Source: Paramoeba atlantica
Lineage: Eukaryota; Protista; Discosea
Reading direction: 5' to 3'
NCBI GenBank assembly: GCA_977017575.1
Contig: CDRNVI010000034.1
Location: forward strand, 1-64,000
DNA: 64,000 nt
The stretch's first letter is position 1, and each line of letters starts with the position of its first letter. Shown here piece by piece: positions 2,895 to 23,584 of this stretch. The position numbers and the translations under genes were made by a program. The notes beneath the pieces are model-generated. The model searched no databases, had not been told where the DNA came from, and saw only the letters and a list, made by a program, of their open reading frames with translations.

Positions 2895-3352
2895 GTTAGC
2901 CGGGCGGGCCACTCAAAAAAAAGATTTCAGAAGCTTGTTTTCTTCAAGATTGCCCGCCACGATGTAAAGCACTCCCCGCTCCAGCGGGTCTGCACCGCCT
3001 CGAAGGGCCCGCCCGGCGGGCCCTTCAAAAAAAAGATTTCAGAAGCTTGTTTCCTTCAAGATTACCTTCCACGATGTAAAGCACTCCCCGCGCCAGCGGG
3101 TCTGCACCGCCTCGAAGGGCCCGCCCGGCGGGCCCTTCAAAAAAAAGATTTCAGAAGCTTGTTTCCTTCAAGATTACCTTCCACGATGTAAAGCACTCCC
3201 CGCGCCAGCGGGTCTGCACCGCCTCGAAGGGCCCGCCCGGCGGGCCCTTCAAAAAAAAGATTTCAGAAGCTTGTTTCCTTCAAGATTACTTGTCACGAGG
3301 TAAAGCACCACCCGCTCCAGCGGGTCTGCACCGCCTCGAACGGCCCGCCGTA
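2895..3352 (+). repeat. Module C tandem array (~112-bp unit, ~3.7 copies), each unit ending in GC hairpin GAAGGGCCCGC-CCG-GCGGGCCCTTC + A-run; Helitron-like 3' end
   Basis: Units start AAAAGATTTCAGAAGCTTG. The same unit lies just downstream of RepHel (17780-17872) and inverted at 23462-23562. Confidence 0.85.
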
Positions 3353-3353
3353 T

Positions 3354-3558
3354 AACCCAGATTGAAAGGGTCGAGGGAGATACGAAGCAACAGGCGTGGC
3401 AGATTCCCAATGAAAAGAAATGGTATCTCCCCGCACGAGAAAAGCCTTTGCGCTTTCTAGCTCGGAGGCAAACTTCGTGCGGGAGATACCATTTCTTTTC
3501 AGTGGGAATCTGCCACGCCTGTTGCTTCGTATCTCCCTCGCCCCTTTCAATCTGGGTT
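3354..3558. mobile_element. Palindromic foldback/MITE-like element D (copy 1), ~85-bp arms
   Basis: AACCCAGATTGAAAGGG... / ...CCCTTTCAATCTGGGTT inverted arms around a ~36-nt loop; second copy at 23257-23461. Confidence 0.85.
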
Positions 3559-4382
3559 GCGGTGGTTGTAAAACTACCGCTCTACACTCGATTATTGAAA
3601 AAAACAGTGAACAAAAACAGTGAAAACATAAAGAGGAGCACAGTAATATAATAGAAGAAAAAAATATAAAAGGGGGCTCCGGTGGTCCAAAACTGAAATA
3701 AAAATTGAAAAAATGGGGGGTCCATGTGGGGGTTCCAGGGGGGGTCGTCCAGGGGGGGGGTCCAGGGGGGGGGCATGAGCGGAGGTGGCGGAGTTAGCGG
3801 AGGTGGCGGAGTGGCAAGAATTCAAAGTTTGAAGCACATCGTGCTCAGACGGCGAGTTCAGACTATAAACAATTGCGGTGGTTGTAAAACTACCGCTCTA
3901 CACTCGATTATTGAAAAAAACAGTGAACAAAAACAGTGAAAATATAAAGAGGAACACAGTAATATAATAGAAGAAAAAAATATAAAAGGGGGCTCCGGTG
4001 GTCCAAAACTGAAATAAAAATTGAAAAAATGGGGGGTCCATGGGGGGGGGGTCCATGGGGGGGGTCCAGGGGGGGCGTCCATGGGGGGGTCCATGGGGGG
4101 GTCCAGGGGGGGGTCCAGGGGGGAGGGTCATGGTCGAGCAAATTTTTTCGAAAAAATTAGTTTTCGAAAAAAAACCGCAGAAAGGGTAGCCGGGGTCTTG
4201 GCGCGCATTTTCCACCCTCCTACCCGGGGGTGACCCCCCCGCGTATCCGCAGGACGGGTCCGCCAAGTTCGGATTCTTTCGGAAAATGTTTTTTGAAAAA
4301 AATTTCAACTGCGATTTCTTTTTTAGGCTCTTCGTTAAACGCGGTGGTAGTTTTCAACTCGAAGAGCGCAGCATGAGTGACT
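3557..4382 (+). mobile_element. Two B modules (3557-3775, 3873-4310), separated by an ~85-bp fragment of the ZnF ORF 3' end and followed by half of hairpin A
   Basis: Both start TTGCGGTGGTTGTAAAACTACCGC. About 3795-3860 matches 11271-11335. 4312-4382 is the A left arm plus loop. Confidence 0.8.
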
Positions 4383-4674
4383 TATTGATAGTTTTATAGT
4401 TTCTGCAAACCCTGGAAAAAAGAATTACACCGCCAGAAAATGCTACAAAAAAGGGCTGTACGTAATGGGCTAAAGTGCTTTGTGCTAAAATCGCGTCTTT
4501 CTGATATTGGTTGAGTTTTTTTGATTCTAATTTCGATCTTTTTTGATGGTTTTGGCTAGTCTTTATTTTTACGTTTTTCAAGAGTTTCAATTTATTGGGC
4601 TTAACGAATCTTCTAAACCCCATTTTTATTCGTTTTAAAATATTTTTCCAAAATTGTTTCACCTATTGTATTTT

Positions 4675-4945
4675 GATAACCATTTTTATTAAGATAACAA
4701 TTTTTATTAAGATAACAATTTTTATTAAGATAACAATTTTTATTAAGATAACAATTTTTATTAAGATAACAATTTTTATTAAGATAACAATTTTTATTAA
4801 GATAACAATTTTTATTAAGATAACAATTTTTATTAAGATAACGATTTTTATTAAGATAACAATTTTTATTAAGATAACAATTTTTATTAAGATAACAATT
4901 TTTATTAAGATAACAATTTTTATTAAGATAACAATTTTTATTAAT
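4675..4945. repeat. 18-bp minisatellite (AAGATAACAATTTTTATT)n, ~15 copies
   Basis: Directly visible and near-perfect; abuts the LINE 5' end. Confidence 0.97.
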
Positions 4946-7900
4946 GGCAATTAATAATAATTGGGCGGAGGCGTCCGGACCTTTTGGGGGCTTCTTGGCG
5001 GTCAAAGGAAAATTCCGATTGGCCACGTGTTGTCGGGGAAACCTGTTTCTACCTAAAAAGCGGAAATGGGGAGTAGCCAAACTCCGACCGCGGGACCTGT
5101 TTCGAATGTCATGTCTTTTTTCTCCTGGAAAACGCTTTGCTGTTTCCTGGAGTATGTCATATGATTTGTGTACGAGGTTGTGGGAGGGGACTGTTAAATC
5201 TATACTTCCGGACGGTAGACGTCTAGTGAAGTATGATTTAGTGGATGATCGCCTTTTCCTGTTTCCTCCGAAAGATGAACGAGTTCAAATTCTGGGTGGT
5301 AGGGTAGGTTTCTTGGGAAAATGGAAATCCAAACGGAATAGGAAACGCACCAACTGTCCTCGAAGTGGCTACCGGGGTCAGGGATCCGAGAAGAATGCTA
5401 ATAGAGGGGGTTTTACGATAAGTGCCCTAAACGTGGACACCTTGAAAGTCAAAGCGACTGATACTTTCACGCTTCGGAAGTCGATTAGACTATATCAAGT
5501 GGCAGGTTTCATGAGGAGTCAACATGTTGACCTCATGGCGCTTCAGGAAACAAGGTTAAAATTTGATGATAAGGTTTCTATTTTACATAGGCAGCTCTTT
5601 TTAAACGGCATCTCACTTCACCTCTACCTGATGAGTGCAATCAACGGGTACAATGGCATGGCATTTTTGAGCACTAAACCTCTATCTGTTCAGAAGATTA
5701 GCGATCGCATTATGAGTGGACACTTCATCCTAGGTGAAACGAAATCCTGCATTTACAACGTCTATTCACCTACAGCGAAAGCTAACAAATCGACGCAACA
5801 AAATTTTGACGAAGACTTATTCGATGCATGTTATGGCGATGATAGTATGGTAAGAATCATTAGTGGAGATCTAAATTCGCCGCTACTCAACCCAGGGGGG
5901 AGAAAATGTTATACAAAGCGTGCAAAACAGTTACTAAAGCTACTATGCTCGCTTGGAGCTCAATCTGTACATGAAGGCTGTTGTGAAAGAAGAAAATGGA
6001 CGTATATATTTCCTAAAACGCGTCGGCATCCAGAGGGAATGACCAAGCAACTTGACCACATCGTTGTTAACAAAAGGTTTTTCTCTTCTATACGATCCAC
6101 GAAATGCCACATCGCACCCATACCTACCAGACATTGTGCTTTGACATCGAACTTCAATTTTCGATGGAAAAATCAAAAACTGTCTCAACAAAAGCCTTTT
6201 TGGGAGGCATTGAAAAATGATGAAATCCGAAATAAGTTTGTTTCGAAAGTAAAGGAATCTTTAAAATCTGTGCCAAAAAGAATTCGGTCGGAGGATCAGA
6301 AGTCCGAAAACGCGCCAAAAATGGAAATAGATAAGGCCAGCGAAATATCTTGGACAAGACCCTCTTCTGCTGTTAGAGTGACCGCATCTAGTCTGCCTAA
6401 GAAAACTAGTAACGCAAAAGAAATTCGCATTGATGCTGAAACAGATCTATCCGGATTTGACATGAAGTCTCTGCTGAAGATTGTGGGCAATAAAACTATG
6501 TTTGCTACTGCATGAAAAGAATTCTCTGAAAAGCTAGGCTCCTCTATTATAAATGAGTGCGACGCCCTGGAAAAAGAGCTTAAATCAACTCCAAAATCCG
6601 CGTACAGAACAATTCGAAAAATTGTAGGGGACAAGAAGCAAGATTTTCCGCTAGTTTCAACTACTGTAAACAGCAGCCTTAATATAGTGAAGAATCATTT
6701 CAGCATGGTAGGGGGTAGTGCTTACAAAGGTCATGAAGCAATAAGTTTACCTACTGCACCAAAACGACTGGCAAAAATTGATGATGGTGAATTTCGAGTG
6801 GAGGAACTAACTGCTGCGATGGTAAAGATTAAGTCAGGAAAAGCTACAGGCGATGATCATATCCCGATTGAAGCTCTACGTGCTATTTCAGCTGATCAAG
6901 ACTTGCATAATGCTCTCCTGGATATAATGAACGAAGTACGAAAAACCGGAAAAGCGGATGAATCTTGGAAATCGATATTGCAGGTCCCGTTGCCAAAGAA
7001 AGGTAACTTGCGCTCACTCACAAATTGGAGACCAATCTGTCTTGTGAATCATGTAGTGAAGATTTTGAATCGAATCAATTTAGACAGAATACAACCAGCA
7101 GTGGAAAGTTCGCTTCGCGGGAATCAATTCGGCTTTCGACCAAACCGCTCAACAGCTGGCGCTCAGGCAACGTTTTTAGAAATAATGGAAAAATCACGCC
7201 GAGGGGCTGGGCTGTTCGTCTGTTTTGTCGACTTTCAACAAGCCTTTCCTTCATTATCATTCGCTGCGATAAAAGAGACATTACGTGCTTTCGATATTCC
7301 CGAAAATCTCAGTTCTACGGTCATGTGTATTTATCAAAATCTCAAATCGCACGTGAAAACACCATACGGTAATACAGACTCATTTCCACTTTTACAGGGG
7401 ACTCTTCAAGGTGACGTTCTGGCCCCATACCTGTTTATTATGGTTCTTGATCGTATTTTAGTTGAATCTATCGACATAAATCGCTTAGGGCTTGTGACAC
7501 ATAGCTCAGAAACTAGGAGCAGAGGCCTAAAGGAACTGCGTGTATCTGATATAAATTATGCTGATGATATAGTTTTCTTCTCCGAATCCAAGGAGGAGCT
7601 AAGCACAATGTTGCACAAACTTAAAACTTCCGCAGAAAAAGCTAATTTGAAAATAAATGTCGGACCAAACAAAACGGCACGGATGACACTAGGTAAAGTT
7701 AAGGATGATGGAAGACCTTTGCAAGTAGTGACACTCGGCGATATACCAAAAGTCAAACAAAAAAAAATACCAAAAGTTACATATTATCGCTACTTGGGTA
7801 GCACTCAGAACGAGGAGGATCGCAGCTCAAACTCACAAGAAAGTGTACGATTAGGTTGGGCAATAATGCACAAACTCAAAGCCATATGGAGTTCTACTAT

Positions 7901-9052
7901 ATCACCAAAAAGCAAATTACACATCTTTAAGTCTCTCGTTCAATCAGTGGTCTATTATAATCCAGGGACTTGGAGTTTAAATAAGATAGAGCTACATGAA
8001 GTGGAAGTCCAAATGAACAGAATGAGGAGGGTCATGTTGGGAGTCAAGTGCTCGAAAGAGGCGCATTGCAGAGTAGACTCTCTTTACCCCACTGACCTAA
8101 AGCCCAATACTGTGATACAATTGCAACGTGCCTCGCTAGTAGGCCACCTTATTCGTCACCCTACTCCATTCGTAACTGCCGTACTATGGAGAACGAATGA
8201 TGAGAGTTCCAAGCCATCGCTATCAGAAAGATGTGCAAAAGAGTTACATTCTGACGTACCTGAGATTCTAAAACTTGGTCAAAATCGGTCTTAATGGTGC
8301 AAGAAACTTGAAAATCTTCAAAATCAGCTTGAACCCAGGCCCTCGTACACTAAAACAACTTCAAAACTATGGGAAAATCTTTTGGTAAAGGGGGTAAACA
8401 AGGGGTGCTACGAAACCCTACAATACATTGAAGAAGGGCGGCAACCATTTCCGATGGGGCCAAATGAAACACACATTTATACAGATGGAGCACGAATCGT
8501 TAAAAAGGATGAAACTCACACAGGTTGTGGGGTAGTCTGCCCCGCCGCGGGCCCTCTATATCTCTTGGGTTAAAACCTCCTCATGAATTCTCTCAATCTA
8601 TTCAGGAAATAGAATCCTTTGCCGCGCACGAGGCTCTTCTCATCGCATTGTCCTACGACGGAGATGTCATTTTGCACACGGATTCTGAGTATGTTTGGGA
8701 TTTCTTTCATGGAGCTATCCATAGGTTCAGATTCATAGGATTTAAATCATTTGAGGGAGGCGCTATACTTCAGAAATTGCAAGAAACATATATTTCGCTA
8801 AGATGGACAAAGCGCTTCTACTGCGTAAAAGTTAAAGCGCATAACGAAAATCCACATAATTATATGGCAGACTGGGTGGCTAAACAAGCAAGTAAAATAA
8901 GCAAGGGAGAAAAGGCTTTGAGATTCTACGGCGAGATTCCTCATGCAGAAGACAAGCGCAAAAACCATACCAACGGTGATTCTAATGGCAGCAAAATGCA
9001 GCGCAAACTTAAATCGGTAACCTCTAGCCAAATATGCACCCATGGTGAGCAC
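4944..9052 (+). mobile_element. Non-LTR retrotransposon (LINE): single decayed ORF Tudor-like + APE endonuclease + RT + RNase H
   Basis: ORFs 4944-6515, 6687-8294 and 8382-8573 share one frame, split by TGA 6513 and TAA 8292; a frameshift at ~8540 leads into 8525-9100. APE motifs: ALNVDTL, LMALQETR, NVYSPT, SGDLNS, LDHIVV. RT motifs: WRPICL, QFGFR, FVDF, LQGDVLAPYLF, YADD. RNase H motifs: IYTDG, EIE, HTDSEY, KVKAH, NYMADWVAK. Confidence 0.93.
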
Positions 9053-9262
9053 GTAGCCGTGGTCTTGGCGCGCATTTTCCACCCCCTTACCCGGGGGTAA
9101 TCCCCCCGCGTATCCGCAGGACGGGTTCGCCAAGTTTAGATTTTTTCAAAAAAAAAAATTTGAGAAAAAATTCAACTTGGCGGAAAAAATGGTAAAAAAA
9201 ATATTTTTTCAAATTTTTTTTCGCTATTGTATTTTGAGAGTTTGGGACCTATACTAGCCATT
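9053..9262 (+). mobile_element. Module B internal portion fused directly to the ZnF ORF
   Basis: Follows the B consensus up to GGGACCTATACTAGC, then switches to ZnF repeat sequence. Confidence 0.85.
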
Positions 9263-9309
9263 CGTTTCGAGAGCATCTCTCGAGTGCGAATCACAAAACC
9301 GAGAAGGAG

Positions 9310-11304
9310 ATGTACGACATGTGGGTGGACCTTGAGGTGCAAGGCACCATGTCTGCAGGCTTTCGGTGCACGAAATGTGCCACAACACAGGGCGATCAAA
9401 ACCCTAAACATCGTACTTTCAAGTATGATGACATGCGCAAACATGTTTTCGAACATGGGCGCGGGGATTATTCCCATTGCAAAGAGTGCTCCTTCTTCGA
9501 GGCGTTGCAAGGGATACCCCCCATAAGACGTACTCGAGAGCATCTCTCGAGTGCGAATCACAAAACCGAGAAGGAGATGTACGACGTGTGGATGGACCTT
9601 GAGGTGCAAGGTACCATGTCTGCAGGCTTTCGGTGCACAAAATGTGCAGAATCACGGGGTAAAGTAAACCCTAAACATCGTACTTTCAAGTATGATGACA
9701 TGCGCAAACATGTTTTCGAACATGGGCGCGGGGATCATTCCCATTGCAAAGAGTGCTCCTTCTTCGAGGCGTTGCAAGGGATACCCCCCATAAGACGTAC
9801 TCGAGAGCATCTCTCGAGTGCGAATCACAAAACCGAGAAGGAGATGTACGACGTGTGGATGGACCTTGAGGTGCAAGGTACCATGTCTGCAGGCTTTCGG
9901 TGCACAAAATGTGCAGAATCACGGGGTAAAGTAAACCCTTCGTCGTACACGTTTATGTACTACTACATGCGCAAACATGTTTTGGAACATGGGCGCAGAG
10001 ATCACGACATTTGTGAAACATGCTCCTTTTTTTCGAGTATGCATGGACAGCGTCCTATCTTGAAAACTCGAGAGCATATTTCGAGTATCAGCCACGAACA
10101 CGAACAGCAACTGTTCGAACTATGGCAAGAGCTTCCCATAGCTCACGCAAGCGCAGGGACAGAATCCGGTTACAAGTGTGTTGCGGACGCTTGTTCCGGG
10201 GAAGTGATGAGCCTCGGCGCTGCAAGAAAGCACGTCGAAAAAAAGCATATGAAAACAGGTGAACAAAGCTGTGAAGCTTGCTCATTCTTTGATGCTGGGG
10301 ATATGCCCCACAAGAAGCACAATCCTGCGAAGTGCTCTGAGCGCAAGCAGTGGTACGCATTTTGGGAAGAAAACGTCCTTGAAACGGAAAACATATACCA
10401 GTGCAAACTGCCTGGGTGTTCTGAAACACCTCTTGAAAAAGAGGCTATAATGAAGCATGTAGCACAACATTGCGAAGGAATGCATTTATGTATTCCTTGC
10501 AATTACTTTTCTATCTTGCAAGATTTCCCGCCAGTCATGGTGGATACTAATCACGCGAATTCTCTGAAACATCGGGAAATGGCGTATCTACATCCGAAAT
10601 GGGAGCTTCACGTAAGTTTCCCTAATGGATCGTATGTATGCGCACTGCACGCCATGCGCAAACTAAGTGTCAAATCTATGATGCGACACATACTCAGTAT
10701 GGGACACCCTTCACAGGTGCTCCAAACTGATATGAATGTTCCTCTGTGCGAAGTATGTGCGTATTTCGCACAGATTCAAGGAACAACGGGTATTATCCCA
10801 GCAGATCAATATCATTTGGTATCAAGTGAGCATACACGTTATGTTCAAACAAAAGTCGACTGGATCGAATTTGCCCCCCACTGCGAACAGAACAAGTTCA
10901 AGTGCACTTTGTGCGCTACCGAACAAATGTTCACGTTTAATGGGCTTCAAAAGCATTTTTACCGCCATCCGCGGCATGCTGAAGCTCGGGCTTTTCGACT
11001 TCGGATCACACAAGCTGAGCGCAATAGAGCTCATGCAGTATCGCAGGATGATGATCTGGAACGTGTGAAGCAATGCTCCACGCTAACACTCACATCTTTT
11101 CAACTGATTGCGAATATTCTCATCAATTCACACATTGTTTGTGATGAAACCCTCCAAAGCGATGGAGATAAAAGATGCTCTATTCAGAGACATCATGATG
11201 GACATAACGTCGTTTACGTTAAAGGCAATGGCGATTGCCTCGCCATGGTATGTCTGACTAAACGACGAGCGGAGGTGGCGGAGTGGCAAGAATTCAAAGT
11301 TTGA
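9310..11304 (+). CDS. Tandem zinc-finger protein (89-aa units, each with a C2H2 and a U1/matrin-like C2H2 finger); probably 5'-truncated
   Basis: 267-bp units at 9310, 9577 and 9844 (CTKC...MRKHVFEH; CKEC...REHLSSANH), then diverged units. The frame is open from 9238. Confidence 0.8.
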   Translation: MYDMWVDLEVQGTMSAGFRCTKCATTQGDQNPKHRTFKYDDMRKHVFEHGRGDYSHCKECSFFEALQGIPPIRRTREHLSSANHKTEKEMYDVWMDLEVQGTMSAGFRCTKCAESRGKVNPKHRTFKYDDMRKHVFEHGRGDHSHCKECSFFEALQGIPPIRRTREHLSSANHKTEKEMYDVWMDLEVQGTMSAGFRCTKCAESRGKVNPSSYTFMYYYMRKHVLEHGRRDHDICETCSFFSSMHGQRPILKTREHISSISHEHEQQLFELWQELPIAHASAGTESGYKCVADACSGEVMSLGAARKHVEKKHMKTGEQSCEACSFFDAGDMPHKKHNPAKCSERKQWYAFWEENVLETENIYQCKLPGCSETPLEKEAIMKHVAQHCEGMHLCIPCNYFSILQDFPPVMVDTNHANSLKHREMAYLHPKWELHVSFPNGSYVCALHAMRKLSVKSMMRHILSMGHPSQVLQTDMNVPLCEVCAYFAQIQGTTGIIPADQYHLVSSEHTRYVQTKVDWIEFAPHCEQNKFKCTLCATEQMFTFNGLQKHFYRHPRHAEARAFRLRITQAERNRAHAVSQDDDLERVKQCSTLTLTSFQLIANILINSHIVCDETLQSDGDKRCSIQRHHDGHNVVYVKGNGDCLAMVCLTKRRAEVAEWQEFKV

Positions 11305-11630
11305 AGCACATGGTGCTCAGACGGCGAGTTCAAACCCGCTCATCGCAATATTCCCGGCGGCCTCACTCTAAGAGGCTGGGCTGATAACCGACTAGGCCCA
11401 GTACTCGGAGGACCGTCCCGGACCCTCCCGTCAGGGAACCAGCTCCCTTACCCGGCTTACACCTCTTGGGCAAGCCGTGTTGACGTACAGTTCGTCGACG
11501 CAGCGTGTTGGTAACAGCACGTTGGTGCCGCCTTGGACAAGCGGAAACTGGTAGAGGACGTCGGCCTCGGAACTTCCAAATCTGTATGTGAAGGGTCTGG
11601 CTTGCCAGTGACCATCCGGAGCAATCCGGA

Positions 11631-14600
11631 ATGATTTGGATTTTTTGGATTTGGAAACGACGAGTGTTCACATACAATTGCGCAGCTTCTATGGAAACAC
11701 AGATAGCGGCAATTCGAACAGTCTACAATATTGGAAACATGGCTACTACGCCAGTTCCTTTAGTAGGAAACGATGAAGGTGAGCTCTCCCTGGGAGCGAT
11801 AGCCTACACTATCACGCAAGACCGTGATTGGCCGAAACTGACAGAACGTGATAAACTTTTATCACTCTGGAAGTGGCTCGAAGCTTCACTGGAAAAAGGC
11901 GAAGTGGGGGTTATACCCCTCACTTTGTATCCACAAGAAAAGCGTACCAAAGAAGCATTCACAAGGCTAGATCATCCACTAAAATCAGTAGAGATTCTCT
12001 ACTTTGTGGAAAATGTATTATGTAAAACCATTAACACACGACGATTTCCTGTGAAAGTATGTCCATTCAATGAATGTGACAAGTTCACTTCAAGGAACCG
12101 TGTGGGTTTACACATATTTACATACTTGGAAACAGATGAATCATCGGGACCCATATGGGTCCTTGTTTCCTTGAAAAAGAAGGGTGAAAAGAACGTTTAT
12201 ACGTTTATTAAGAGTCCCTCTCTTGAAAATGAAATTGTTTCAATTTTGAATCAAGCAACTGTCACGAATGTGACGAATGCTAGCACTATTGACAGTGCAG
12301 CATATGCTATCATGCAGGTGTGTGAAAATACCATCTTTCACACAAACGAAATATGCAAAGAATCTTCAGCCAATGAACTTCGGTACTGGCTTGAACGATG
12401 TTGCATCGCGAAATGTATTGTCAATTTTGACACATACGAAGTCAATGGAGATGGCTCACGTCGAACACGTTTCGACATTGAGCGCAATCCAAAAGACGCA
12501 CTAAAATACTTCTATGAGACTTCCTACATTGATCGTCTTCCTTTGGAAGATTTTTCAGTCAGTACGGAAGCTCAAGAAGAGTGCATGAAAAGGTACAAAA
12601 AGAGAATGAACGACGACCAACGTATCACAAGTTGTGATTCTTGTAAAGTTATTCTTCTCGAAAGTGACCTTCCGAATCCCGAAGCGCAACTTTGTGCAAG
12701 GGATCAAAGAATAATGGACAAAAAAGGGAGAATTCCCCGCGGTCCAGTAGAACAACCTTCTACAAATCACCTTCCAGTACCCACGCTGGTAGAAGAGATC
12801 CTTCTTCAAAAGGTGTTTTTACACTGCACAATCATCAGTGTACATAGGAAAGGTGGCGCATATGCCGCATCCTTAAGGCCAGACACGAAGTTCACTGGAC
12901 ACGTGACGGCTACAGCACGCGAAACCCTTGAGCTCTTGCAACTTGAAAGAGTTCCTGATCTCGAGGGCGCGATTAAGAACATCCAAATTGTTTGGATAGC
13001 AAACGAACGGAGAACGAAACGTAGTCAAAGACTATGTTCTGCACAGCTGAGTGGCATATTCGGCGTGAAATCAGAGACCCTGAACACCTGGGTAAACTTC
13101 CTCTGTGAGCATAACCACGTGTATGCTCAACTGAAAGAGGAAGGAAAGATCAACGTTGTTACCGAGAAACATTGTAGAGACGTTGTCTCACATCTTTGGG
13201 ATAGATCTGTTTCCCAGGAGGGTGAAAACGCCATCAACAGTATGGTCACCCAAGAAGTGGCTTCCGATACGTTACATCGCGATCCTCGCGGTGAAATCAC
13301 ACGATCTTTTGTAACTGATCACAGCCCTGTAAGCAATGCGCCGGCGGGTGCGCAAATTACGCATGCCGTGGCGATGCAACTGAAACAAAAAGAAGGTTTA
13401 CTCAATGAGTATACCGACATGGAAAACATCTTGCTCGGAGCATTTCCGACGCTGATGCAAAAGTACCCTTTTAAGGGTTCAACGTTTGAACTATATGAAA
13501 TCAAGGAAATTCTAGAGCAATCGGATTCCCGATTTGCAAAGAATACTGGATTCATATTTTACTGCTACGATGTGCTTCGGCGCCGTGCAGTCTCATCAGC
13601 AGTAGTGCAAAATCTGAAGCATAACAAAGATATGCACAGAAGCCTCATGAATTTTTGCAATGCTGATGCTTTCTATCACATTGTACAACAGGCTATAAGG
13701 AACCCAAACAGTTCCGAGGCGAAACTTCTGGAAACAAAGTTTCTGCCATTTGTGCAAGTATGCGCAAAAACGATACCCTTTTCGCCAGCAAAGCGAAAGG
13801 CATCACAAGGCCAGATCTACTCCTTATACAGGCGATACGGGCTGCCAAGTTACTGGGTCACAGTGAGTCCAAACATGAACGATAACGTTCTAGCTCTAAG
13901 AATCATCACAAATGATGAGAGCGAAAAAATGCAGGAAATGGGGGCCAACCTTCTCAAGCGATGTGAGCTTGTGCAAGGGAATCCTGTCAGATCCACTAGC
14001 ATTTTCGAACGGCAAATCCGTACTCTTCTTACCGAATTGTACGGAATGTCGAATGTAGATGAGGTAAAGAAGGAACGTGACGTTCTTGAAGGCCTCTTTG
14101 GTCGCCCTCGAGCATTTTTTGGTGTTGTAGAATGCCAGAAAAGAGGTGCGCTACACTTTCATAGTGTGCTATGGAACAATCTTAGTCCACATTACGTCTC
14201 CGAATTAATTCACATTGTGAAGGAGCACGATGGTCTCGCGAAGTCTTTGGGTACGACGATGCGCGCTGATCTGCCCGAGCGGGCGCAAAGGATCAGTAAG
14301 GAGCTCTACGGCCCTGCAACGCTCGACTACTCAAAGATGTATCGCGGAGGTCTACATATCATTCCTGATGAAAAGGATGATTATTTCAGGGAACATGTGG
14401 CCGAATGTGCTGTTGATGTTCAGAAGCACGTTGGTCACAAACCCATGTGTTTCAAAATGAAAGGAAACATTATCAAGAACAAATGCCGATATGGCATTCC
14501 ATCCGTACTTCATGAAAATGAAACGGAAGTTAGAGAGGTTGAGGTTCAGATGGATGAATCCGGACAACCGGAATTCCGGCCCAAGGCTCCAACACGGCCG

Positions 14601-17578
14601 CTTAAAAATGATACCATTTGGCCAGTACTTGATGAAAGGTCTCTGATTGTGCTTCTTCGCAATAACCAGGACCCGACACAACACACTAAACGGGGATCCA
14701 TCACCGTTCCGTACAATGAAACACTCATTGCTTGCGTAAGATGCAATACATGTGTTGTTTTCATTGGGAGCGAAGGTCCCGGCATAAAAATTATGCAATA
14801 TCTCATAAAATATATGAGCAAGGACATTGGTCCACCTGTGTACATTGTACCAGCACTTCGCGCAGCCAATGACCACCTTCAAATGGTTCTGAATTCAGAG
14901 CACAGAGTGCAAACTGACATTCCGATGGCACGCTTAATTCTACAGAAATTGTCGAACATGACACATCGAAAGATAGAAGTTTCAATCGAAATAGCAACTG
15001 CCTTTTGTCTCGGCCAATCCTCCGAGTATATGAGCCATAACTTCACATGGATCAATATGAACCGTGTAATGAAGTTCCTGGCAAATATCTCAAGTGATTC
15101 AGATCACAGAGATCTAGAAATCAGTGACGATGATTCGTCACAAGACTCTGATATGGAGTTCGACAACGGTATCTTAGAGGCTCCTCTAATGATCAACGAA
15201 CATGATTGTGCAGTTCTTGCACCACTCCATGTGAGTTACATGCGCAGGGGCGAAGATCTTCAAGACCTTGACCTGTATTCCTATGCAGGCATTGTCAGCG
15301 TAAAGAAGAAAAGAGCTGAACTAGCTCAAGAAGAGCCCGGTCATGATTCAGATTTTGAGTCAGGGACAAATCGAAGACGTCGTCGCGGACGTCGTGCTAA
15401 TGGGAGATACGCCTTTGAGGACATTGAAGGCCTCCCGGGTTTTGAGCCTGGAGATATTGTTGAGCAACAGTTGCGCTCTTTGCACACTGTGCCAGCTATA
15501 CCAGGTTTTCCCATATTGAGTTCTTCAAAAGAACCTGGGGCACGAGCTCGAATCCATCTTCGAGTAGCGAAACACATGGTGGCATTGTTTTCCCCATGGA
15601 CGAAAGGCTCACCGAGCCATGAAATGACCCTAGAAGGGTTTGAAAAGCTTCTCAATGAAGCGAAAATAAATACGCCTGGAAAGTATGACATAATGTGCAA
15701 CTTTCTTCGGCTTTTACATGCTTCGAAGAATACAGAGAACGCGGCAGATTTGTATCGACGCAAAGATGCTTGCACTCTGGAAGAAGCAAGATTAGCACGC
15801 AACATTGCGTACGAAAATGAGCTTGAAGTGCGAGAGGTTGAACCTCATCTTCAAGATGCTCTTGAAGCACAGCAGAACACTGCAGTGGTTAATGAAGAGC
15901 GATTGGTTCAGCAGAATGCATACTGCGAACTACAAACGCGAGCTTTAACGGCCGCGTTAGGAGGTTCTACTGAGAACTCCTCTGAAGAAAATGTTGATCT
16001 TGCATCGAAAATGACAAGGACGAGGTCCAATATTTCAGTCATAAATGCGCGAGAGCGCTATGCTGAAATGATCCAAAACGAACGATTTGCAACTTCGGCT
16101 CAATCTGAGCCAAGTGCACCAGTGGACAGAGCTCATTTTAATGAGGATCGTCCACTGGCTCGCAGTAATCAATACGAGTTTGATCGCAGCTACATATTGC
16201 GCGAAGACAACAGTTCCATTGAACTGTTGCAAGCACAGAAACAGTGCGTAAATCAAATTGAAGATTTACTAAACGGGAAACTAGACCCCGAGCGGAAATG
16301 TATGTTTCTGCTCGGTGGCCCCGGAACCGGGAAAAGTCTAGTTTTCCGTTTCATAATGCAAGAACTGGGAAGCCAATGTATTGCAATGTCGCCCACTGGG
16401 ATCGCCGCATCAGTACTGCACTGTTGCACAATACACGCTTCCCTCTGCATACCGATAGGGGCTACTGCAAGAAATTTGAAACATCTTTCAAGCAGTAGCC
16501 TTCTACTAACAAAGGTATGAGAAATGTCGATTAATCATAGTCGACGCAGTGTCAATGATCAGCAAGTGTTTCCTTTCCTGTATCAACACTAGGCTGCAGC
16601 AAATCAAAGGAAATGAGCAGCTTCCCTATGGAGGCATCAACATGCTCTTTGTTGGAGATTTTTATCAGCTGAGACCAGTACAAGGAGCGTCTCTTACCAT
16701 AGAAGATAGCTCTCCTGGTAATAATCCCATTTTTGAGAATATTTTTCAAGTCAGGTATGTGTTTGCACTCAAACAGCAAATGCGAGCACGACAAGATACT
16801 GTATTTTCAGATATCTTGCGTCTTCTTCGAAAAGCTCCCAATGAGGGGTTGAAGAAGTTCATCCAATTGGTAAAACCTCTTACCTCTGAGGACTAAGAAA
16901 AGTTCCGCAATGCAATTGTCATTGTTGGAACAAATATTGAACGGCACAAGATTAATGTCGCAATGGCAAGAAATTTTGCCAGACGTCACAATTGCCCATT
17001 GTTCGCATGGACAGGCGATAACGTCCAAGGTAAACTCATTGACACACACCCTGAAGCATTTTCTGTATTTGTAAAAGGAGCACCCGGTGTAATCACCGAG
17101 AACATTGCTCCTTATACCACGAAAATTGCGAATGGGACAGTGATTGAAATGAGAGACCTTGTGTCAAACGATTTGTCATACGACACTATTGATGGTGTAA
17201 GCCCCTTCTTTTATGCAATGCATTGAGAAGGGGTCAGGTGTAGAATTTTACGCCAAAAAGACGCAGCACCATGATAAGGCTTCCCAAGGAAACTTTCAAG
17301 TGGAATTGGGATTTGCCTATACGTATCACAAAGTACAAGGTATCACCGTGAAGAACGGTGTTATTCTTGACTTGAATGATAAGGCGTGGTCCAAGAGACC
17401 GGAACTCGCCAAGCTCACAGTAGCAATATCCAGGGCACAATGCCTCGATGATATTCGAGTGCTCCCTGGCATGGGAACAGATCGCCCAGGAACACACCTG
17501 ACTTCAGGTTACCATAGGCCTAAATTTCCGGCCATGGAAAAAGCAAATCGGCTTACCGATTTGACTTATCAATTCTAA
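11631..17578 (+). pseudogene. Helitron2/Helentron-type RepHel (HUH Rep + Pif1 helicase), disrupted in the helicase
   Basis: DUF6570-like segment (PTLVEEILL...GHV...WVNFLCEHNHVY). Rep motifs: GLPSYWVTVSP, GVVECQKRGALHFHSVLW, YLIKYMSK. Helicase motifs: GGPGTGKS, PTGIAA, IHASL, LIIVDAVSMIS (after frameshift ~16510), VGDFYQLRPV, TAA 16894 in frame, frameshift ~17215, AYTYHKVQGIT, TVAISRA. Likely start ATG 11691. Confidence 0.92.
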
Positions 17579-17779
17579 GAAATTAGATTGAAACGACCTT
17601 CTTAGGAAGACCTCTCTAGGGGGGAAGCACGCTTGATACCGGTCACAAGCCCGGCGTCTTCAGCTTCGGCAGAAGAAGTGCGAGTGACCCCAACGCTCAC
17701 GCGCCCTCTAACAAAAAAAAATGTCTCCATCGTAGCTGCAGAATTACGCTCCGTCAAAATTGCTTTCAATTTTTTTTAT

Positions 17780-17872
17780 CGAAATTTCAGAAGCTTGTTT
17801 GCTTCAAAAGCACCCACCGCGGCAGCGGGTCTGCACCCTCTCGAAGGGCCCTCCGGGCAGGCCCTTCAAAAA
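17780..17872 (+). terminator. Module C copy: putative Helitron 3' terminus (subterminal IR CACCCACCGC 17811-17820; hairpin GAAGGGCC/GGCCCTTC 17843-17867; A-run)
   Basis: Lies ~200 bp after the RepHel stop and is homologous to the 2895-3352 units. Confidence 0.65.
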
Positions 17873-17959
17873 CAAGACTTCTACGTTCATGTATTGCTTT
17901 TTAAGTTGAATGTTTCTAGACTCAGCTTGATTTTTTTGAAAACTTTCTTTGAATTTACT

Positions 17960-18301
17960 ATGGACTCGGCGGAGAATCAATCAACCAATGGTAACGACAT
18001 TTCCGACAAGGAAAGAGATACAAAGTGCAAAAGAGATGATTACTTAGAATCTCTACACGTTTTGCGCTCTGCGCGCGAAGAGCGTGACGAGCGCTCAATC
18101 ACAATAGAACACCTTCCCTCCTCTACGAATAAAGAAGACCTTACCAAGCATTACGCTTCGTATGGTGAAATCGATTGCATAACAATCGTATCAAAAAAGG
18201 GACTGGCGCACGTGTGTTTTAGCACTACGGAAGAAGCGAAGCGCGCATCGAGCGTTTACTTCAAAGGGAAAAAGAAGAGAAACAGATACTTAAATTTCTG
18301 A
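17960..18301 (+). CDS. RRM-domain protein or gene fragment
   Basis: RNP2-like ITIEHL and RNP1-like KGLAHVCF with correct spacing; may continue by frameshift to ~18535. Confidence 0.6.
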   Translation: MDSAENQSTNGNDISDKERDTKCKRDDYLESLHVLRSAREERDERSITIEHLPSSTNKEDLTKHYASYGEIDCITIVSKKGLAHVCFSTTEEAKRASSVYFKGKKKRNRYLNF

Positions 18302-18962
18302 ATAAGTGTGTAAGAAGACGTTTGGAAGTGAAAGTTGGTTTAAAATTTTGAAGTCATGATTCGAAGGTTGGAGAAGGAAAGAAAACACTTTTCTTTCGAG
18401 AAATTTTCGGCTTAAATTCGTCCACAGCACCGTTTCTTTTTACGATTCATCGCATCAAAGTTTTTCTGTGGTATTACTTTGTGTCTCGGAAACCCTCTGT
18501 AAGTATTTGTAACTTCGCATTTTCTAAACTCAAATAAATACAATTGAAACTAAATTTGTTAAAAAAATGTTTACATTTACATAGCAGATCTACATTCGCA
18601 GTCATCACTTCTTCTATTTTTAGCCTGATCATTCAACAAATATGCTTTTGATGACTCAATTAGTGCATACCCAACGTACTGTCAGAAAAGCGTTCCGACA
18701 TGGCATTAACTGCACCCCTGGCGTAAACCAAATGAATCAAAACGAAGAAGTAAATCCACGAGGTAAAGCCCCCCCTTCAAAAGCCGGGGTGAATTCAAGT
18801 GCCTTTCAAAAAAAGGGTCTCCACCCTGCTTCATTCAAAATCGTGCGAACCGAAGGAAAACACATGTGAGCGGAAATATGCAAAAACAACCCTATTTTTG
18901 CCCAACTATCGGCTCTTTTTGGACCAAATCCAGAATTATCCCTCTGGTTTCTTTTACTCTCC

Positions 18963-20662
18963 TGTCAAATTTTTCTTTTCTAGGCTCTTCGTTAAACGCG
19001 GTAAAGGAAAAAAATATAAAAGGGGGATCCGGTGGTCCAAAATTGAAAACAAAAATTGAAAAAAATGGGGGGTCCATGGGGGGGGGGCATACCTTACCCG
19101 GGGGTGACCCCCCCTCGTATCCGCAAGACGGGTCCAAGTTCCGATTTTTTCGGAAAAAAACAATTGAAAAAATTTTCAACTTGACGAAAAAATTGGTAAA
19201 AAGAATATTTTTCCAAAGTTGTTTCGCCTATTGTATTTTTATAGTTTGGGACCTATTCTAGCTTTTTGCGTCATTGGTTTTGCGAGGTGTCGCTTCTTGA
19301 AGCCGTGGTACGCCTCCTAAAATGTCCCATTTTTGATCAAAAAATGCGAAAAAGTAATTTTTGGACCCCAAGAGGTCTTTTTGGGTCGTACGAATCGTGT
19401 GGTTGGAGTCGCATTCTCTACCCAATACGTTCTGTAGCCTCGAATGCATGCCTACGAGTCATTTCCCACACGCAAATGTCATCTTTAGTGCTCTATATAC
19501 AAAAATCACCCCATTTTTACCTAAAAATCGGCTATTTTTGGCTCAAATCCTTCCGTTTTCTTCCGCGTCCCTGATCAATTTTTTTTTTAGGCTCTTCGTA
19601 AAACGCGGTGGTAGTTTTCAACGCGAAGCGCGCAGCATGAGTGACTTCTAAGTTGAAAACAAAAACCGCGTTTAACGAAGATCCTAAAAAAGAAAATTAT
19701 TGCGGTGGTTGTAAAACTACCGCTCTACCCTCGATTATTGCGGTGGTTGTAAAACTACCGCTCTACACTCGATTATTGAAAAAAAAGTGAACAAAAACAG
19801 TGAAAATATAAAGGGGAACACAGTAATATAATAGAAGAAAAAAATATAAAAGGGGGCTCCGGTGGACCAAAACTGAAAAAAAAATTTGAAAAAAATGGGG
19901 GGTCCAGGGGGGGGGTCCAGGGGGGGGGGTCCAGGGGGGGGGTCCAGGGGGGGGGGGTCCAGGGGGGGGGTCATGGTCGAGCTAATTTTTTCGAAAAAAT
20001 TAGTTTTCGAAAAAAAACCGCAGAAAGGGTAGCCGGGGTCTTGGCGCGCATTTTCCACCCCCCTACCCGGGGGTGACCCCCCCGCGTATCCGCAGGACGG
20101 GTCCGCCAAGTTCGGATTTTTTCGGAAAAAAAAATTTGAAAAAAATTTCAACTTGGCGAAAAAAATGGCAAAAAAAATATTTTTCCAAAAACGTTTCCCC
20201 TATTGTATTTTTTTAGTTTGGGACCTACACTAGCTTTCTCCGCAGTTGTTTTCGCAAGGTATCACTTCTTCGAACCGTGGTGCGCCCCTCAAAATGACCC
20301 ATTTTTGACCGAAAAAGGTGAAAAAGTATTTTTCGGACCTAAAGGGGCATTTTTGGGTCGAAAGAATGGTATGGTTGGAGTCGTATTCTCTACCCAATAC
20401 GTTCGGTAGGCTTTCATTCATGCCTACGAGTGATTTCCCACGCGCAAATGTCGGATTTAGTGCTCTGAGAGCAAAAGTACGCGAAAATCACCCCATTTTT
20501 ACCCGAAATTCGGCTATTTTTGGCCATAATCTTTCCGTTTTCCAGGCCAAATTTTCTTTTTTAGGCTCTTCGTTAAACGCGGTGGTAGGTTTCAACGCGA
20601 AGAGCGCAGCATGAGTGACTTCTAAGTTGAAAACAACCACCGCGTTTAACGAAGAGCCTAAA
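18963..20662 (+). mobile_element. Tandem array of B-A non-autonomous Helitron-like units (A hairpins at ~19578-19697 and ~20552-20662)
   Basis: Alternating B modules (starts ~19699/19738) and ~100-120-bp A hairpins TTAGGCTCTTCGTTAAACGCGGTGGT...ACCACCGCGTTTAACGAAGAGCCTAA. Confidence 0.85.
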
Positions 20663-21214
20663 TTGATGGAGATACTACTCCCTCGCTACCGTAGGTTAAT
20701 TGGTCGTGCCCGATTTGTGGCCCGATTTCGTGCCCGATATCGTTTCAGGTGAGTTTTCGAAAAAAATATTTACAAAGACGTATGAATCGAATTGAGTGAC
20801 AAGATTACTAGTTTTTCAACAATTCCGATGGGTACCCCCTGCCCCCCCCACCTCCCCACCTGGGTGATCATAGCAATTTTTGAAATGTTTTAAAAAAAAA
20901 CTAAAAATTTGTGGGTGAAAGTGAAAAAATATATTTTTCCCAAATCAACTCCTAGACCTTTTTTTGAGAGTTTGGGGCCTGATATACGTGTATACGCTTT
21001 GGTTTCATTCGATATTTCTCCACCCTGTTCTGGTAATACACCTACAAAGTTCAAATTTTACCTGGAAGTGTGTGACACGCAAGGCCGTAGAGGAAGGAGG
21101 AGGCGCAAGGCAAAAAGGAAGAAGGCGGACCCTTCTGTCTTTTTGCCGCGGCGACGACGACTTCCTCGCGTGGGAAGCTGTAAGGGGTCTTAGGGAGCAT
21201 GTTCCGATGGCTAT

Positions 21215-21413
21215 CTAATCCAGGCTAAAGTGGATGAGGGGGATACCAAAGTCACCTTTGGAAAACCACCTCGAAACTGGAACGGTATCTCCCGGTTTGT
21301 AGAGCATTCTGATGTGGCAAAAGAGTCTTTAACGGGTGATACCGTTCCAGTTTCGAGGTGGTTTTCCAAAGGTGCCTTTAGTATCTCCCTCGTCCACTTG
21401 AGCCTGGATTTAG
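21215..21413. mobile_element. Palindromic foldback element E (~80-bp arms) sharing the GGGAGATAC scaffold with D
   Basis: AATCCAGGCTAAAGTGGATGAGGGGGATACC... / ...GTATCTCCCTCGTCCACTTGAGCCTGGATT. Confidence 0.8.
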
Positions 21414-23075: not shown

Positions 23076-23256
23076 TACTCAACGCTAAAATAGTGCGAGA
23101 GAGGAACCATTCCGAGCCTGCTCAAATCTTGCCTTAGCTTTCCGCGGCATTCCAAGCGTTTCTTTACGACGAGCGTCTGATCTTTCAATGGCTTCCCTGC
23201 GTGCCCTAATTTCCTGCGTTTCTGGTCAAAACACAAAAAAATGATCGATACTAATA

Positions 23257-23562: not shown

Positions 23563-23584
23563 TTGAAGTATGACCCTGCTCGTT

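What the first reader, a model, noticed from the sequence alone, without database searches (positions are those of the whole stretch)
3557..20662. Modular Helitron2-like system: one 5' end, two alternative 3' ends, autonomous and non-autonomous members side by side
Seen: B starts TT-GCGGTGGTTG and folds into a hairpin (GCGGTGGTT-GTAA-AACTACCGC). Its inverse CAACCACCGC lies 18 nt from the end of module A (ends CTAA) and, as CACCCACCGC, about 22 nt before the GC hairpin of module C. B joins directly to the ZnF ORF at 9262 and to a ZnF 3' fragment at ~3780, which ties B physically to the ZnF-RepHel element. Known: Helitron2/Helentron elements have asymmetric terminal inverted repeats, a 5' hairpin and T-rich ends. 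Unusual here: the 3' IR is embedded in a ~100-120-bp near-perfect foldback (A), units form B-A tandem arrays, and the host appears to be a kinetoplastid, a group where I am not aware of described Helitrons.
Basis: partly seen in the sequence, partly recalled or inferred. Interest (0 to 1): 0.9.

Follow-up and report, generated by a model that had tools for sequence, protein, structure and literature searches.

The report
Helitron2-type transposon nest in a kinetoplastid
This stretch is a pile-up of rolling-circle (Helitron2-type) jumping genes and their short protein-less derivatives in a kinetoplastid protist, a group said to lack Helitrons, and one derivative is present in one assembly of this locus and cleanly absent from another, so the system moved recently.

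Summary
B, a hairpin always preceded by TT, is the 5' end. Foldback A is the 3' end. Both bound RepHel-carrying copies at four loci with different flanks.

Three details are wrong:
- **The window's "autonomous" copy (3873-19700) is dead.** It carries a LINE and a SINE insertion, two frameshifts, a stop and a mutated 3' repeat. An intact 2468-aa ZnF-RepHel ORF exists on another contig.
- **The "ZnF 3' fragment" at ~3780 is a SINE head.** The B-ZnF joint at 9262 is a deletion specific to this copy.
- **Module C is not an alternative 3' end of B.** Together with a 205-bp foldback it ends a different family (G), which has its own 5' head.

Three families (B/A, G, X) share one plan. Each has a 10-12-nt 5' repeat whose exact complement lies 18-37 nt from the 3' end, inside the 3' arm of a long foldback.

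G (23257-26347) is absent from an independent assembly of this locus, with no target duplication, inside a T run. RPB1 places the host among early-branching kinetoplastids.

This is a new variant of a known kind. First-stage notes on other pieces of this genome flagged the same families.

The parts
2899..3349 (+). Module C: 112-bp tandem unit x4 with a GC hairpin. It lies directly upstream of a G-type 3' foldback.
   Evidence: TRF; alignment of ten C copies
3354..3558 (+). 205-bp foldback, the 3' end of a G-family element. The 3' repeat CGTATCTCCCTC is at 3528-3539. A B head abuts its last base.
3557..3773 (+). Truncated B unit: TT, hairpin head and G-rich repeats.
3779..3860 (+). 5' fragment of the SINE (tRNA-like head, with an 18-bp duplication).
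3873..19700 (+). Defective coding HLE2 element. It runs from TT + B head (3873-3896) to foldback A plus its A-rich tail (19578-19700). Its 3' repeat is mutated to CAAAAACCGC.
   Evidence: Collinear with L003:1079-13423, L004, L001 and L009; ends
4384..9052 (+). Nested non-LTR retrotransposon: APE ORF 4944-6515, RT 6687-8294, RNase H 8525-9100, and an 18-bp x15 repeat in the leader. Boundaries are approximate.
   Evidence: Pfam; TRF; flanked by B-long sequence
9267..11269 (+). Zinc-finger-like N-terminal part of the RepHel ORF, including 267-bp repeats x2.8. It is cut off from the rest by the SINE.
11270..11654 (+). SINE insertion with A/B-box-like head. Target duplication AAACGACGAG at 11260-11269 and 11655-11664. 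Absent in L003 and L004.
11665..17578 (+). DUF6570, Rep (HFH at 14154-14162, YLIKY at 14799-14813) and Pif1-like helicase (Walker A at 16314-16337). Frameshifts lie near 16505 and 17200 and an in-frame stop at 16894-16896.
17807..17881 (+). Single internal copy of module C; L001 and L003 have two.
17960..18301 (+). RRM-domain ORF carried inside the element; the region is collinear at about 97% in L001, L003 and L009. An RRM ORF is called in L003.
   Evidence: Pfam
19702..20662 (+). Non-coding B...A unit in tandem behind the coding element. A 38-bp duplicated head (19702-19737) is followed by the 925-bp unit 19738-20662. Foldback A is at 20553-20662 and the 3' repeat ACAACCACCGC at 20633-20643.
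20663..21425 (+). X-family unit. The 5' head TTGATGGAGATACT... starts at the last base of A. The 3' foldback has arms 21217-21294 / 21333-21410, with the 3' repeat AGTATCTCCCTC at 21380.
   Evidence: second copy in L007
21780..22472 (+). Second subfamily of B...A unit (82% identical to the solo copy), with a mutated head.
22503..22745 (+). Minimal B head + foldback A unit, about 240 bp.
22754..23076 (-). Array of three 105-bp B heads.
23257..26347 (-). G-family non-coding element, insertion-polymorphic. On the minus strand it runs from the 5' head TTGAGGGAGATACGG (26347 downwards), through a 1.9-kb 60/120-bp tandem array and module C (23568-23466), to the 205-bp foldback (23461-23257). The ends are ambiguous by 2 nt.
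   Evidence: Absent in L005; empty junction seen in runs X1, X2 and X4 (table 7); TRF
26346..26514 (-). X-type head fragment abutting the foot of a half copy of foldback A.
34722..35436 (-). Solo B...A unit in the spacer between two genes of the minus-strand cluster. Flanks are ...cgacaTT|GCGG and ...GCCTAA|TGCTT. It is present in both assemblies.

Best explanation
The region is a nest of HLE2 (Helitron2-type, no endonuclease) rolling-circle transposons in a kinetoplastid genome.

The coding element encodes one long protein: zinc-finger-like repeats, DUF6570, a HUH/two-tyrosine Rep nuclease and a Pif1-like helicase. It also carries an RRM ORF. It is bounded by a 5' head (T/TT, then an 11-nt repeat that folds into a 9-bp hairpin) and by a 3' foldback. 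The 3' arm of that foldback holds the exact complement of the 5' repeat, 18-31 nt from the end.

Short non-coding units keep only these ends and are mobilised in trans. Two further non-coding families, G and X, use a different but equally matched repeat pair.

Inferred mechanism:
1. Rep nicks the top strand at the T-rich 5' boundary.
2. The helicase peels the strand 5' to 3'.
3. The 3' foldback forms in the displaced strand and presents the 3' repeat, paired to an internal near-copy of the 5' end, as the stop and cleavage signal.
4. The strand is pasted between T and T without target duplication, often at the foot of a resident foldback.

Shown: the protein domains, the ends, the matching of the repeats, one filled/empty pair without duplication, and the host affiliation. 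Inferred: the roles of the hairpin and foldback, trans-mobilisation, and which RepHel serves G and X.
For: **Protein.**
- Helitron_like_N, DUF6570 and PIF1 all score above Pfam's cut-offs.
- The HUH histidines and the YxxxY tyrosines are invariant across 23 relatives.
- 19 of the 23 proteins scanned (the query and 22 relatives) carry DUF6570 and none carries an AP endonuclease.
- DUF6570 is reported as the marker of the HLE2 clade (PMC11417382).

**Ends.**
- 33 B heads have 23 different upstream flanks. All are preceded by TT, against a TT background of 8%.
- Foldback A with its tail is followed by many different flanks.
- RepHel-bearing copies in the window, L003 and L004 start at the B head and end at A, each with different flanks. 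L001 and L009 supply further A-type 3' ends.
- An internally deleted copy in L004 keeps both ends.

**Repeat matching.**
- The best exact complementary matches are 10-12 nt, at head offset 2 in most elements, in eight elements tested except one with a mutated head. Between 2 and 14 of 20,000 shuffles reach the same length.
- The pairs differ by family: GCGGTGGTTGT/ACAACCACCGC, GAGGGAGATACG/CGTATCTCCCTC and GAGGGAGATACT/AGTATCTCCCTC.
- The 3' arm of A matches the B head perfectly. The 5' arm of A carries a mismatch in nearly every copy.

**Mobility.**
- Window 23259-26345 is absent from contig L005, which is otherwise 99.8% identical.
- There is no target duplication and the site is a T run.
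- The empty junction also appears as loose ends in three sequencing runs.

**Definition.** The published Helitron2 features are listed in PMC3627910.
Against: - No filled/empty pair was found for the B/A family itself, so its exact termini and T^T target rest on flank comparison in A/T-rich sequence.
- The defining Helitron2 3' hairpin downstream of the 3' repeat is absent; the repeat lies inside the foldback.
- No labelled Rep/Hel tree was built. HLE2 placement rests on the DUF6570 marker and on the architectures of neighbours.
- The extra loci all come from one ENA assembly of the same organism. It may share raw data with the window's assembly, so some "copies" could be alternative assemblies.
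- Some arrays are plain segmental duplications (the 7.2-kb repeat in L004, the 105-bp head arrays), not transposition products.
- No partner RepHel with G/X-type ends was found here.
Confidence: 0.8

Rival explanations
1. B, A, G and X are foldback or MITE-like elements moved by a cut-and-paste DDE transposase. They merely accumulate around an unrelated dead Helitron.
For: Long near-perfect foldbacks are typical of foldback elements and MITEs. DNA transposons of the Merlin type are reported from relatives of the host (PMC12278014).
Against: - The ends are asymmetric: a 22-nt hairpin at one end and a 110-205-bp foldback at the other. Units are strictly oriented.
- The filled/empty pair shows no target duplication.
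- Every complete A sits 3' of a B head.
- The RepHel copies at three loci whose 5' side was recovered start exactly at B, and RepHel copies at five loci end exactly at A.
Confidence: 0.05
2. The shared blocks are segmental or tandem duplications in a repeat-rich island, and the 3.09-kb difference is a deletion or an assembly artefact. Nothing here transposes now.
For: L004 holds an exact 7.2-kb tandem duplication including its spacer. Head arrays and C arrays are satellite-like. The ENA contigs may come from the same data as the window. The coding copy in the window is dead.
Against: - There are 23 different flanks directly upstream of TT + B head.
- Both edges of the 3.09-kb difference coincide to the base with a family-typical 5' head and with the last base of a foldback. 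That foldback ends at the same base at 3558.
- The empty junction is seen in three runs.
- An intact 2468-aa ORF exists, and copies are 96-99% identical.
Confidence: 0.1
3. The system is a proto-Helentron or 'HLE2-reverse' type element, with 5' TT, a 5' stem-loop and a Helitron1-like 3' CTRR end, rather than a Helitron2 with terminal repeats.
For: B/A units begin with TT and a 5' stem-loop. Their short form ends ...CCTAA, which fits CTRR. The HELIANO paper describes proto-Helentron as having 5' TT, 3' CTAG and a 5' stem-loop, with the DUF6570 marker.
Against: - Most A ends run on through AAAAGAAA(A)T(T)AT beyond CTAA.
- G and X end in CTGGG(TT) and CTGGATT..., not CTRR.
- The 5' stem-loop contains the repeat instead of lying upstream of it.
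- No proto-Helentron sequence was available for comparison.
Confidence: 0.05

Closest known systems
Helitron2 (Bao & Jurka 2013, PMC3627910; e.g. Helitron-1_CRe and its non-autonomous derivatives in Chlamydomonas), part of the HLE2 clade
   Same: - RepHel without an endonuclease.
- Short asymmetric terminal inverted repeats.
- The 5' repeat lies 0-2 nt from the end and forms a 5' hairpin, and the element starts with T.
- The 3' repeat is subterminal, about 20-30 nt from the end.
- Insertion after T with no target duplication.
- Non-coding derivatives share both ends.
   Different: - There is no separate small hairpin after the 3' repeat. The repeat sits in the 3' arm of a 110-205-bp foldback, and the 5' arm of that foldback is a near-copy of the element's own 5' end.
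- An A-rich tail follows the foldback in two families.
- Several end-types co-exist in one genome.
- The host group was reported to lack Helitrons (PMC8788227).
- The nearest proteins outside the host organism's own assembly that span the Rep region are only 25-31% identical; one short fragment reaches 44%.
DINE-1 / HINE non-autonomous Helentrons (Thomas et al. 2014, PMC4067079; from the title, abstract and general knowledge, not read in detail here)
   Same: Abundant short non-coding rolling-circle derivatives with subterminal inverted repeats, a 3' stem-loop, internal tandem-repeat expansions and a tendency to form arrays.
   Different: Their partner encodes an AP endonuclease; the RepHel here has none. 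The foldbacks here are far longer.
Proto-Helentron / 'HLE2-reverse' (Phytophthora and Fusarium; described in PMC11417382)
   Same: 5' TT, a 5' stem-loop, DUF6570-bearing RepHel, and a CTRR-like end in the short form of A.
   Different: Here the stem-loop includes the terminal repeat. Most 3' ends are not CTRR. The 3' foldback is long.

Membership tests
HLE2 (Helitron2/Helentron clade) | RepHel protein with a HUH + two-tyrosine Rep domain and a Pif1-like helicase | tested here: met
   Pfam Helitron_like_N (76 bits) and PIF1 (88 bits) in P0009. H1319/H1321 and Y1534/Y1538 are invariant in 23 sequences. HFH and YLIKY are present in the window copy.
HLE2 (Helitron2/Helentron clade) | DUF6570 upstream of Rep, the marker that separates HLE2 from HLE1 according to PMC11417382 | tested here: met
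   DUF6570 scores 44-46 bits against a cut-off of 24.3. It is present in 19 of the 23 proteins scanned, the query among them.
HLE2 (Helitron2/Helentron clade) | Rep/Hel phylogeny placing the protein inside the HLE2 clade | not tested
   No labelled HLE1/HLE2 reference sequences were available as tool references. Only the marker domain and the neighbour architectures stand in for a tree.
Helitron2 | Short (8-15 nt) asymmetric terminal inverted repeats: 5' one 0-2 nt from the end, 3' one about 20-30 nt from the end | tested here: met
   10-12-nt exact matches, at head offset 2 in most elements, lie 18-43 nt from the 3' end in seven of eight elements. Between 2 and 14 of 20,000 shuffles reach the same length.
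Helitron2 | 5' terminal hairpin involving the 5' repeat | tested here: met
   The B head folds into a 9-bp stem (-8.0 kcal/mol as DNA). The G and X heads form shorter stems.
Helitron2 | A hairpin located downstream of the 3' repeat, next to the 3' end | tested here: not met
   The 3' repeat lies inside the 3' arm of the foldback. What follows it is the foot of that arm plus an A-rich tail.
Helitron2 / HLE2 | Insertion between T and T (or T/C) without target-site duplication | tested here: met
   G family: in the filled versus empty comparison (window versus L005) the insert lies in ...gtattgta^ttt^attag (minus strand) with no duplication and a 2-nt ambiguity. B/A family: only consistent (TT before all 23 distinct heads); no empty site was found.
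Helentron | AP endonuclease domain fused C-terminal to the helicase | tested here: not met
   There is no Exo_endo_phos hit in the intact 2468-aa protein at E<0.1 or in 22 relatives. The APE at 4944-6515 belongs to a LINE with its own RT and RNase H.
Canonical Helitron (HLE1) | 5' TC, 3' CTRR preceded by a 16-20-nt hairpin, insertion between A and T | tested here: not met
   The 5' end is T(T)G in all copies. The 3' ends are mostly not CTRR. DUF6570 is present.
MITE / foldback DNA transposon (DDE) | Symmetric terminal inverted repeats and target-site duplication | tested here: not met
   The ends are asymmetric and the filled/empty pair shows no duplication.

The most novel reading that the evidence does not exclude
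This is an undescribed sub-type of HLE2 whose termination signal is a long 3' foldback. The 3' terminal repeat is pre-paired to an internal decoy copy of the element's own 5' end. At least two co-evolving end-types, and possibly two RepHel lineages, exist in one genome, and new copies tend to land at the foot of resident foldbacks. It is currently mobile in an early-branching kinetoplastid. That would make it the first bona fide Helitron, and the first demonstrably active DNA transposon, in Kinetoplastea.
Probability: 0.4. Interest if true: 0.75.

Novelty: new variant of a known kind. Interest (0 to 1): 0.62.

Why it matters
[quoted passage not shown] They also state that trypanosomatids lack DNA transposons altogether, with Merlin in Bodo and Perkinsela as the only earlier report for the group (PMC12278014). 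A complete and apparently recently active HLE2 system in a relative of Perkinsela changes that picture and dates the loss to later kinetoplastids.

Three families in one genome share a plan in which the 5' repeat co-varies with a 3' repeat held inside a foldback. This is a natural experiment on how HLE2 transposases recognise and pair their two ends, a step that has only been hypothesised (PMC3627910). The elements also sit between genes of polycistronic clusters, so they may affect transcript processing.

Tried and rejected
- **RNA searches.** Rfam at gathering thresholds and ARAGORN found nothing in the window. The tRNA-like nature of the SINE head therefore rests on its A/B-box-like motifs only.
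- **Host identification.** The ESM Atlas did not resolve the host. A homology search with the Nop-domain protein returned only itself. RPB1 finally gave named relatives.
- **Solved structures.** The sequence search found only Pif1-type helicases and no solved Helitron transposase at E<=0.001.
- **Distant relative L002.** This contig does not reach the element's ends, so its inverted repeats look like chance.
- **C as a 3' end of B.** Rejected. The motif reads CACCCACCGC, CACCCCCCGC, CACTCCCCGC or CACCACCCGC in different copies. C is always followed by another C, by the 205-bp foldback or by internal sequence.
- **OTU protease motif.** A GNGDCL motif at the ZnF/Rep joint looked like one, but no OTU hit appears at E<0.1 and the intact copy has Ser at that position.
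- **Tiny GT-AG introns in the helicase.** Rejected. Frames do not close, and the intact copy shows plain frameshifts.
- **Read laying.** Most of the joints table is uninterpretable because the repeats are multi-copy. Only the loose ends at 23258 and 26346 were used.


Full report
**1. What is in the sequence**

The hairpin GCGGTGGTTGTAAAACTACCGC ("B") occurs ten times in the window at up to three mismatches, where none is expected. It folds into a 9-bp stem.

A self-comparison and tandem-repeat search resolve the following modules.
- **B-long.** A ~925-bp unit (19738-20662) starts with TT + B.
- **Foldback A.** B-long ends in this foldback: arms 20560-20596 / 20626-20662, 95% complementary.
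- **Shorter B...A units.** These lie at 21780-22472 and 22503-22745. A solo unit lies on the minus strand at 34722-35436.
- **Module C.** A 112-bp tandem unit sits at 2899-3349.
- **205-bp foldback.** It occurs at 3354-3558 and at 23257-23461.
- **LINE.** The ORFs at 4944-9100 are the endonuclease, reverse transcriptase and RNase H of a non-LTR retrotransposon.
- **RepHel.** The ORF at 11631-16520 carries DUF6570, Helitron_like_N and the start of PIF1.

**2. More copies from the same organism**

A homology search and one 90% cluster led to contigs of a single ENA assembly. I fetched eight loci from it: L001, L003, L004, L005, L007, L008 and L009, plus one unrelated metagenomic relative, L002.

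L005 is the same locus as window 21396-44535 at 99.2-99.8% identity. The assembly is therefore the same species. It also independently confirms that the repeat island and the gene cluster are one molecule.

L003 holds an intact 2468-aa ORF (P0009) that fuses the zinc-finger-like region to DUF6570-Rep-helicase.

**3.

Relative to L003 and L004 the window has a 385-bp insertion at 11270-11654, flanked by a 10-bp duplication AAACGACGAG.
- The insertion begins with an A/B-box-like, tRNA-like head and ends in a T-rich tail. I read it as a SINE.
- It supplies the last 12 codons and the stop of the "ZnF ORF".
- The 65 bp at 3796-3860 match the head of this SINE, not ZnF.

The B-ZnF joint at 9258/9267 is a deletion of about 1 kb that L003 and L004 retain.

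The helicase has frameshifts near 16505 and 17200 and an in-frame stop at 16894. A LINE of about 4.7 kb sits in the 5' region. The copy's own 3' repeat is mutated to CAAAAACCGC.

**4. B and A are the ends of the RepHel element**

*5' end.* In the window (3873), L003 (1082) and L004 (6380), the block shared by the coding copies begins exactly at TT + B, with unrelated sequence upstream.

*3' end.* In the window/L001, L003, L004 and L009 the block ends at foldback A and its tail AAAAGAAA(A)T(T)AT, with unrelated sequence downstream.

*Deletion derivative.* A copy in L004 joins mid-Rep to 45 bp upstream of A and keeps both ends.

*Flank counts.* Over all sequence in hand, 33 B heads have 23 different upstream flanks. 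All 23 end in TT, against a dinucleotide background of 8%, and 20 of 23 have A at -3.

*Linkage.* Every complete A lies 3' of a B head in the same orientation.

*Origin of B-long.* It is a deletion-type derivative. Positions 2-861 match the 5' region of the L003 element at 94%, and positions 325-926 match its 3' end at 84-87%.

*5' leader.* In the coding element the 5' region contains about 1.7 further B-long units. Their A foldbacks all lack the 3' arm, so they carry no second functional end.

**5. One ground plan, three families, matched repeats**

The first 11 nt after TT in B (GCGGTGGTTGT) have their exact complement (ACAACCACCGC) in the 3' arm of A. It lies 18 nt before ...GCCTAA, or 31 nt before the end of the tail.

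The 5' arm of A reads GGTAGT at that place in nearly every copy. The 3' arm therefore stays complementary to the distant 5' end rather than to its own partner arm.

| Family | 5' repeat | 3' repeat | Position of 3' repeat |
|---|---|---|---|
| B/A | GCGGTGGTTGT | ACAACCACCGC | 18 nt before ...GCCTAA (31 nt from tail end) |
| G (minus strand, 26347 to 23257) | GAGGGAGATACG | CGTATCTCCCTC | 17-19 nt from the last base of the 205-bp foldback |
| X (20663-21425; second copy L007:1952-3310) | GAGGGAGATACT | AGTATCTCCCTC | In the 3' arm of a 194-bp foldback, followed by an A-rich tail |

G and X differ by a compensating change at the last repeat position.

In seven of eight elements the best exact match is 10-12 nt, at head offset 2 in most of them. 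Only 2-14 of 20,000 shuffles of the 3' end reach that length. The eighth element has a mutated head.

**6. Module C**

C occurs in three contexts:
- inside the coding element, downstream of the helicase (one copy in the window, two in L001 and L003);
- in front of the 205-bp foldback of G elements;
- as an array at 2899-3349.

The decamer that resembles the A repeat varies between copies, and no unit ends at C. C plus the 205-bp foldback is the 3' end of family G, which has its own 5' head. It is not a second 3' end for B.

**7. Evidence of movement**

Contig L005 lacks window 23259-26345.
- The empty site reads ...actaataaa|tacaatac...
- The filled site has the G element between the same bases.
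- There is a 2-nt ambiguity and no duplication.
- On the element's strand the target is gtattgta^ttt^attag. The insertion is therefore inside a T run behind an A, the same A-T-T context that precedes all B and X heads.
- Both edges coincide with family landmarks. One is the head shared with X copies elsewhere. The other is the last base of the foldback, the same base at which the 3558 copy ends.
- Contigs of three sequencing runs show the empty junction as loose ends at 23258 and 26346 (table 7).
- Word depth over B and A is one to two orders above neighbouring sequence in those runs. This agrees with high copy number but is not a count.

**8. Classification**

The published Helitron2 definition (PMC3627910) has four structural features.

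| Feature | Here |
|---|---|
| 5' repeat 0-2 nt from the end, inside a 5' hairpin | Met |
| 3' repeat 20-30 nt from the end | Met |
| T at the 5' end, insertion after T without duplication | Met |
| Hairpin after the 3' repeat | Not met: the repeat lies inside a long foldback |

At the protein level, DUF6570 is reported as the HLE2 marker, and UCH as typical of HLE2 subgroups c/d (PMC11417382).
- The protein has DUF6570.
- 19 of the 23 proteins scanned (the query and 22 relatives) have it too, and none has an AP endonuclease.
- The two best hits of the first search carry UCH.
- Identity to proteins outside the host organism's own assembly is 25-31% over the Rep region; one short JGI metagenome fragment reaches 44%.

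I could not build a labelled tree.

**9. Host**

The minus-strand gene cluster is intron-free and unidirectional. RPB1 lacks heptad repeats in its tail.

| RPB1 relative | Identity |
|---|---|
| EukProt PhF_6 | 60% |
| Perkinsela sp. CCAP 1560/4 | 57% |
| EukProt PhM_4 | 57% |
| Trypanosomatids | 38-41% |

PhM-4 is named in the paper that describes Papus ankaliazontas, a free-living prokinetoplastid (PMC7859406). The host is therefore a kinetoplastid close to Prokinetoplastina. Its name is coded in the tools.

[quoted passage not shown] Helitron-like ORFs are mentioned for Diplonema (PMC10161547).

**10. Mechanism (inferred)**

1. Rep nicks at the T-rich 5' boundary.
2. The helicase unwinds 5' to 3'.
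3. The 3' foldback snaps back in the displaced strand. It presents the 3' repeat paired to a decoy of the 5' end as the termination and cleavage signal.
4. The strand is inserted between T and T.

Two observations fit this model. Upstream units that lack the 3' arm are read through. Heads of one family often sit exactly at the foot of a foldback of another family: B at 3558/3559 after G, and X after A at 20662/20663 and at 26433/26441. This suggests insertion targeted to foldback feet rather than read-through.

**11. Limits**
- There is no empty site for B/A.
- All extra loci come from one assembly.
- Copy numbers were not measured.
- No partner was found for G and X. Only a 59%-identical DUF6570 fragment lies beside an X unit in L007.

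Noticed in passing
window 11270-11654; fragment 3779-3860; L001:9887-10659: A ~385-bp SINE-like element with an A/B-box-like (tRNA-like) head and a 10-bp target duplication. In L001 it lies directly behind what looks like a tRNA gene by eye (not run through ARAGORN) and forms an inverted triple arrangement. ARAGORN does not call its head as a tRNA.
   Followed up: partly
window 4384-9052: A non-LTR retrotransposon (APE, RT and RNase H in three ORFs) whose leader holds fifteen copies of an 18-bp repeat ending at the ORF1 ATG. It lies directly behind a half copy of foldback A.
   Followed up: partly
window 17960-18301; L003:11468-12247: An RRM-domain ORF is carried inside the Helitron downstream of the helicase; the region is collinear at about 97% in all four copies that reach that far. 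It looks like a captured host gene. Its source gene was not sought.
   Followed up: no
window 23895-25847: A 1.9-kb array of 60/120-bp repeats containing CACGTG motifs fills the inside of the polymorphic G element.
   Followed up: no
window 3-377 and L003:950-1080: A ~100-bp satellite at the window's start shares a 20-nt core (GTTGGGCTTCGCAAAT...) with the 56-bp satellite into which the L003 Helitron's 5' end is joined.
   Followed up: no
window 49892-50312; L001:10925-11352; L003:19307-19727; L007:5565-5967: A further ~420-bp dispersed repeat (89-93% identical) lies next to Helitron debris on three other contigs, and here just downstream of (3' to) an aldehyde-dehydrogenase-like ORF on the minus strand.
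   Followed up: no
L008:9391-9677: A small foldback with a G/X-type repeat (GTATCTCCCTCG) replaces about 400 bp inside a RepHel copy. It may be the hairpin element that another first-stage note called intron-like.
   Followed up: no
window 59666-60700 (minus strand): The RPB1 C-terminal tail is serine-rich without YSPTSPS heptads, as in trypanosomatids.
   Followed up: partly
window 19696-19778; L001:8032-8105; L008:5989-6090: The 38-bp B head is locally duplicated two or three times. The motif ATTATTG occurs both at the A-tail/B-head joint and 30 nt inside B.
   Followed up: no
window 51501-52230: An imperfect internal tandem repeat lies inside the 1058-aa aldehyde-dehydrogenase-like ORF.
   Followed up: no
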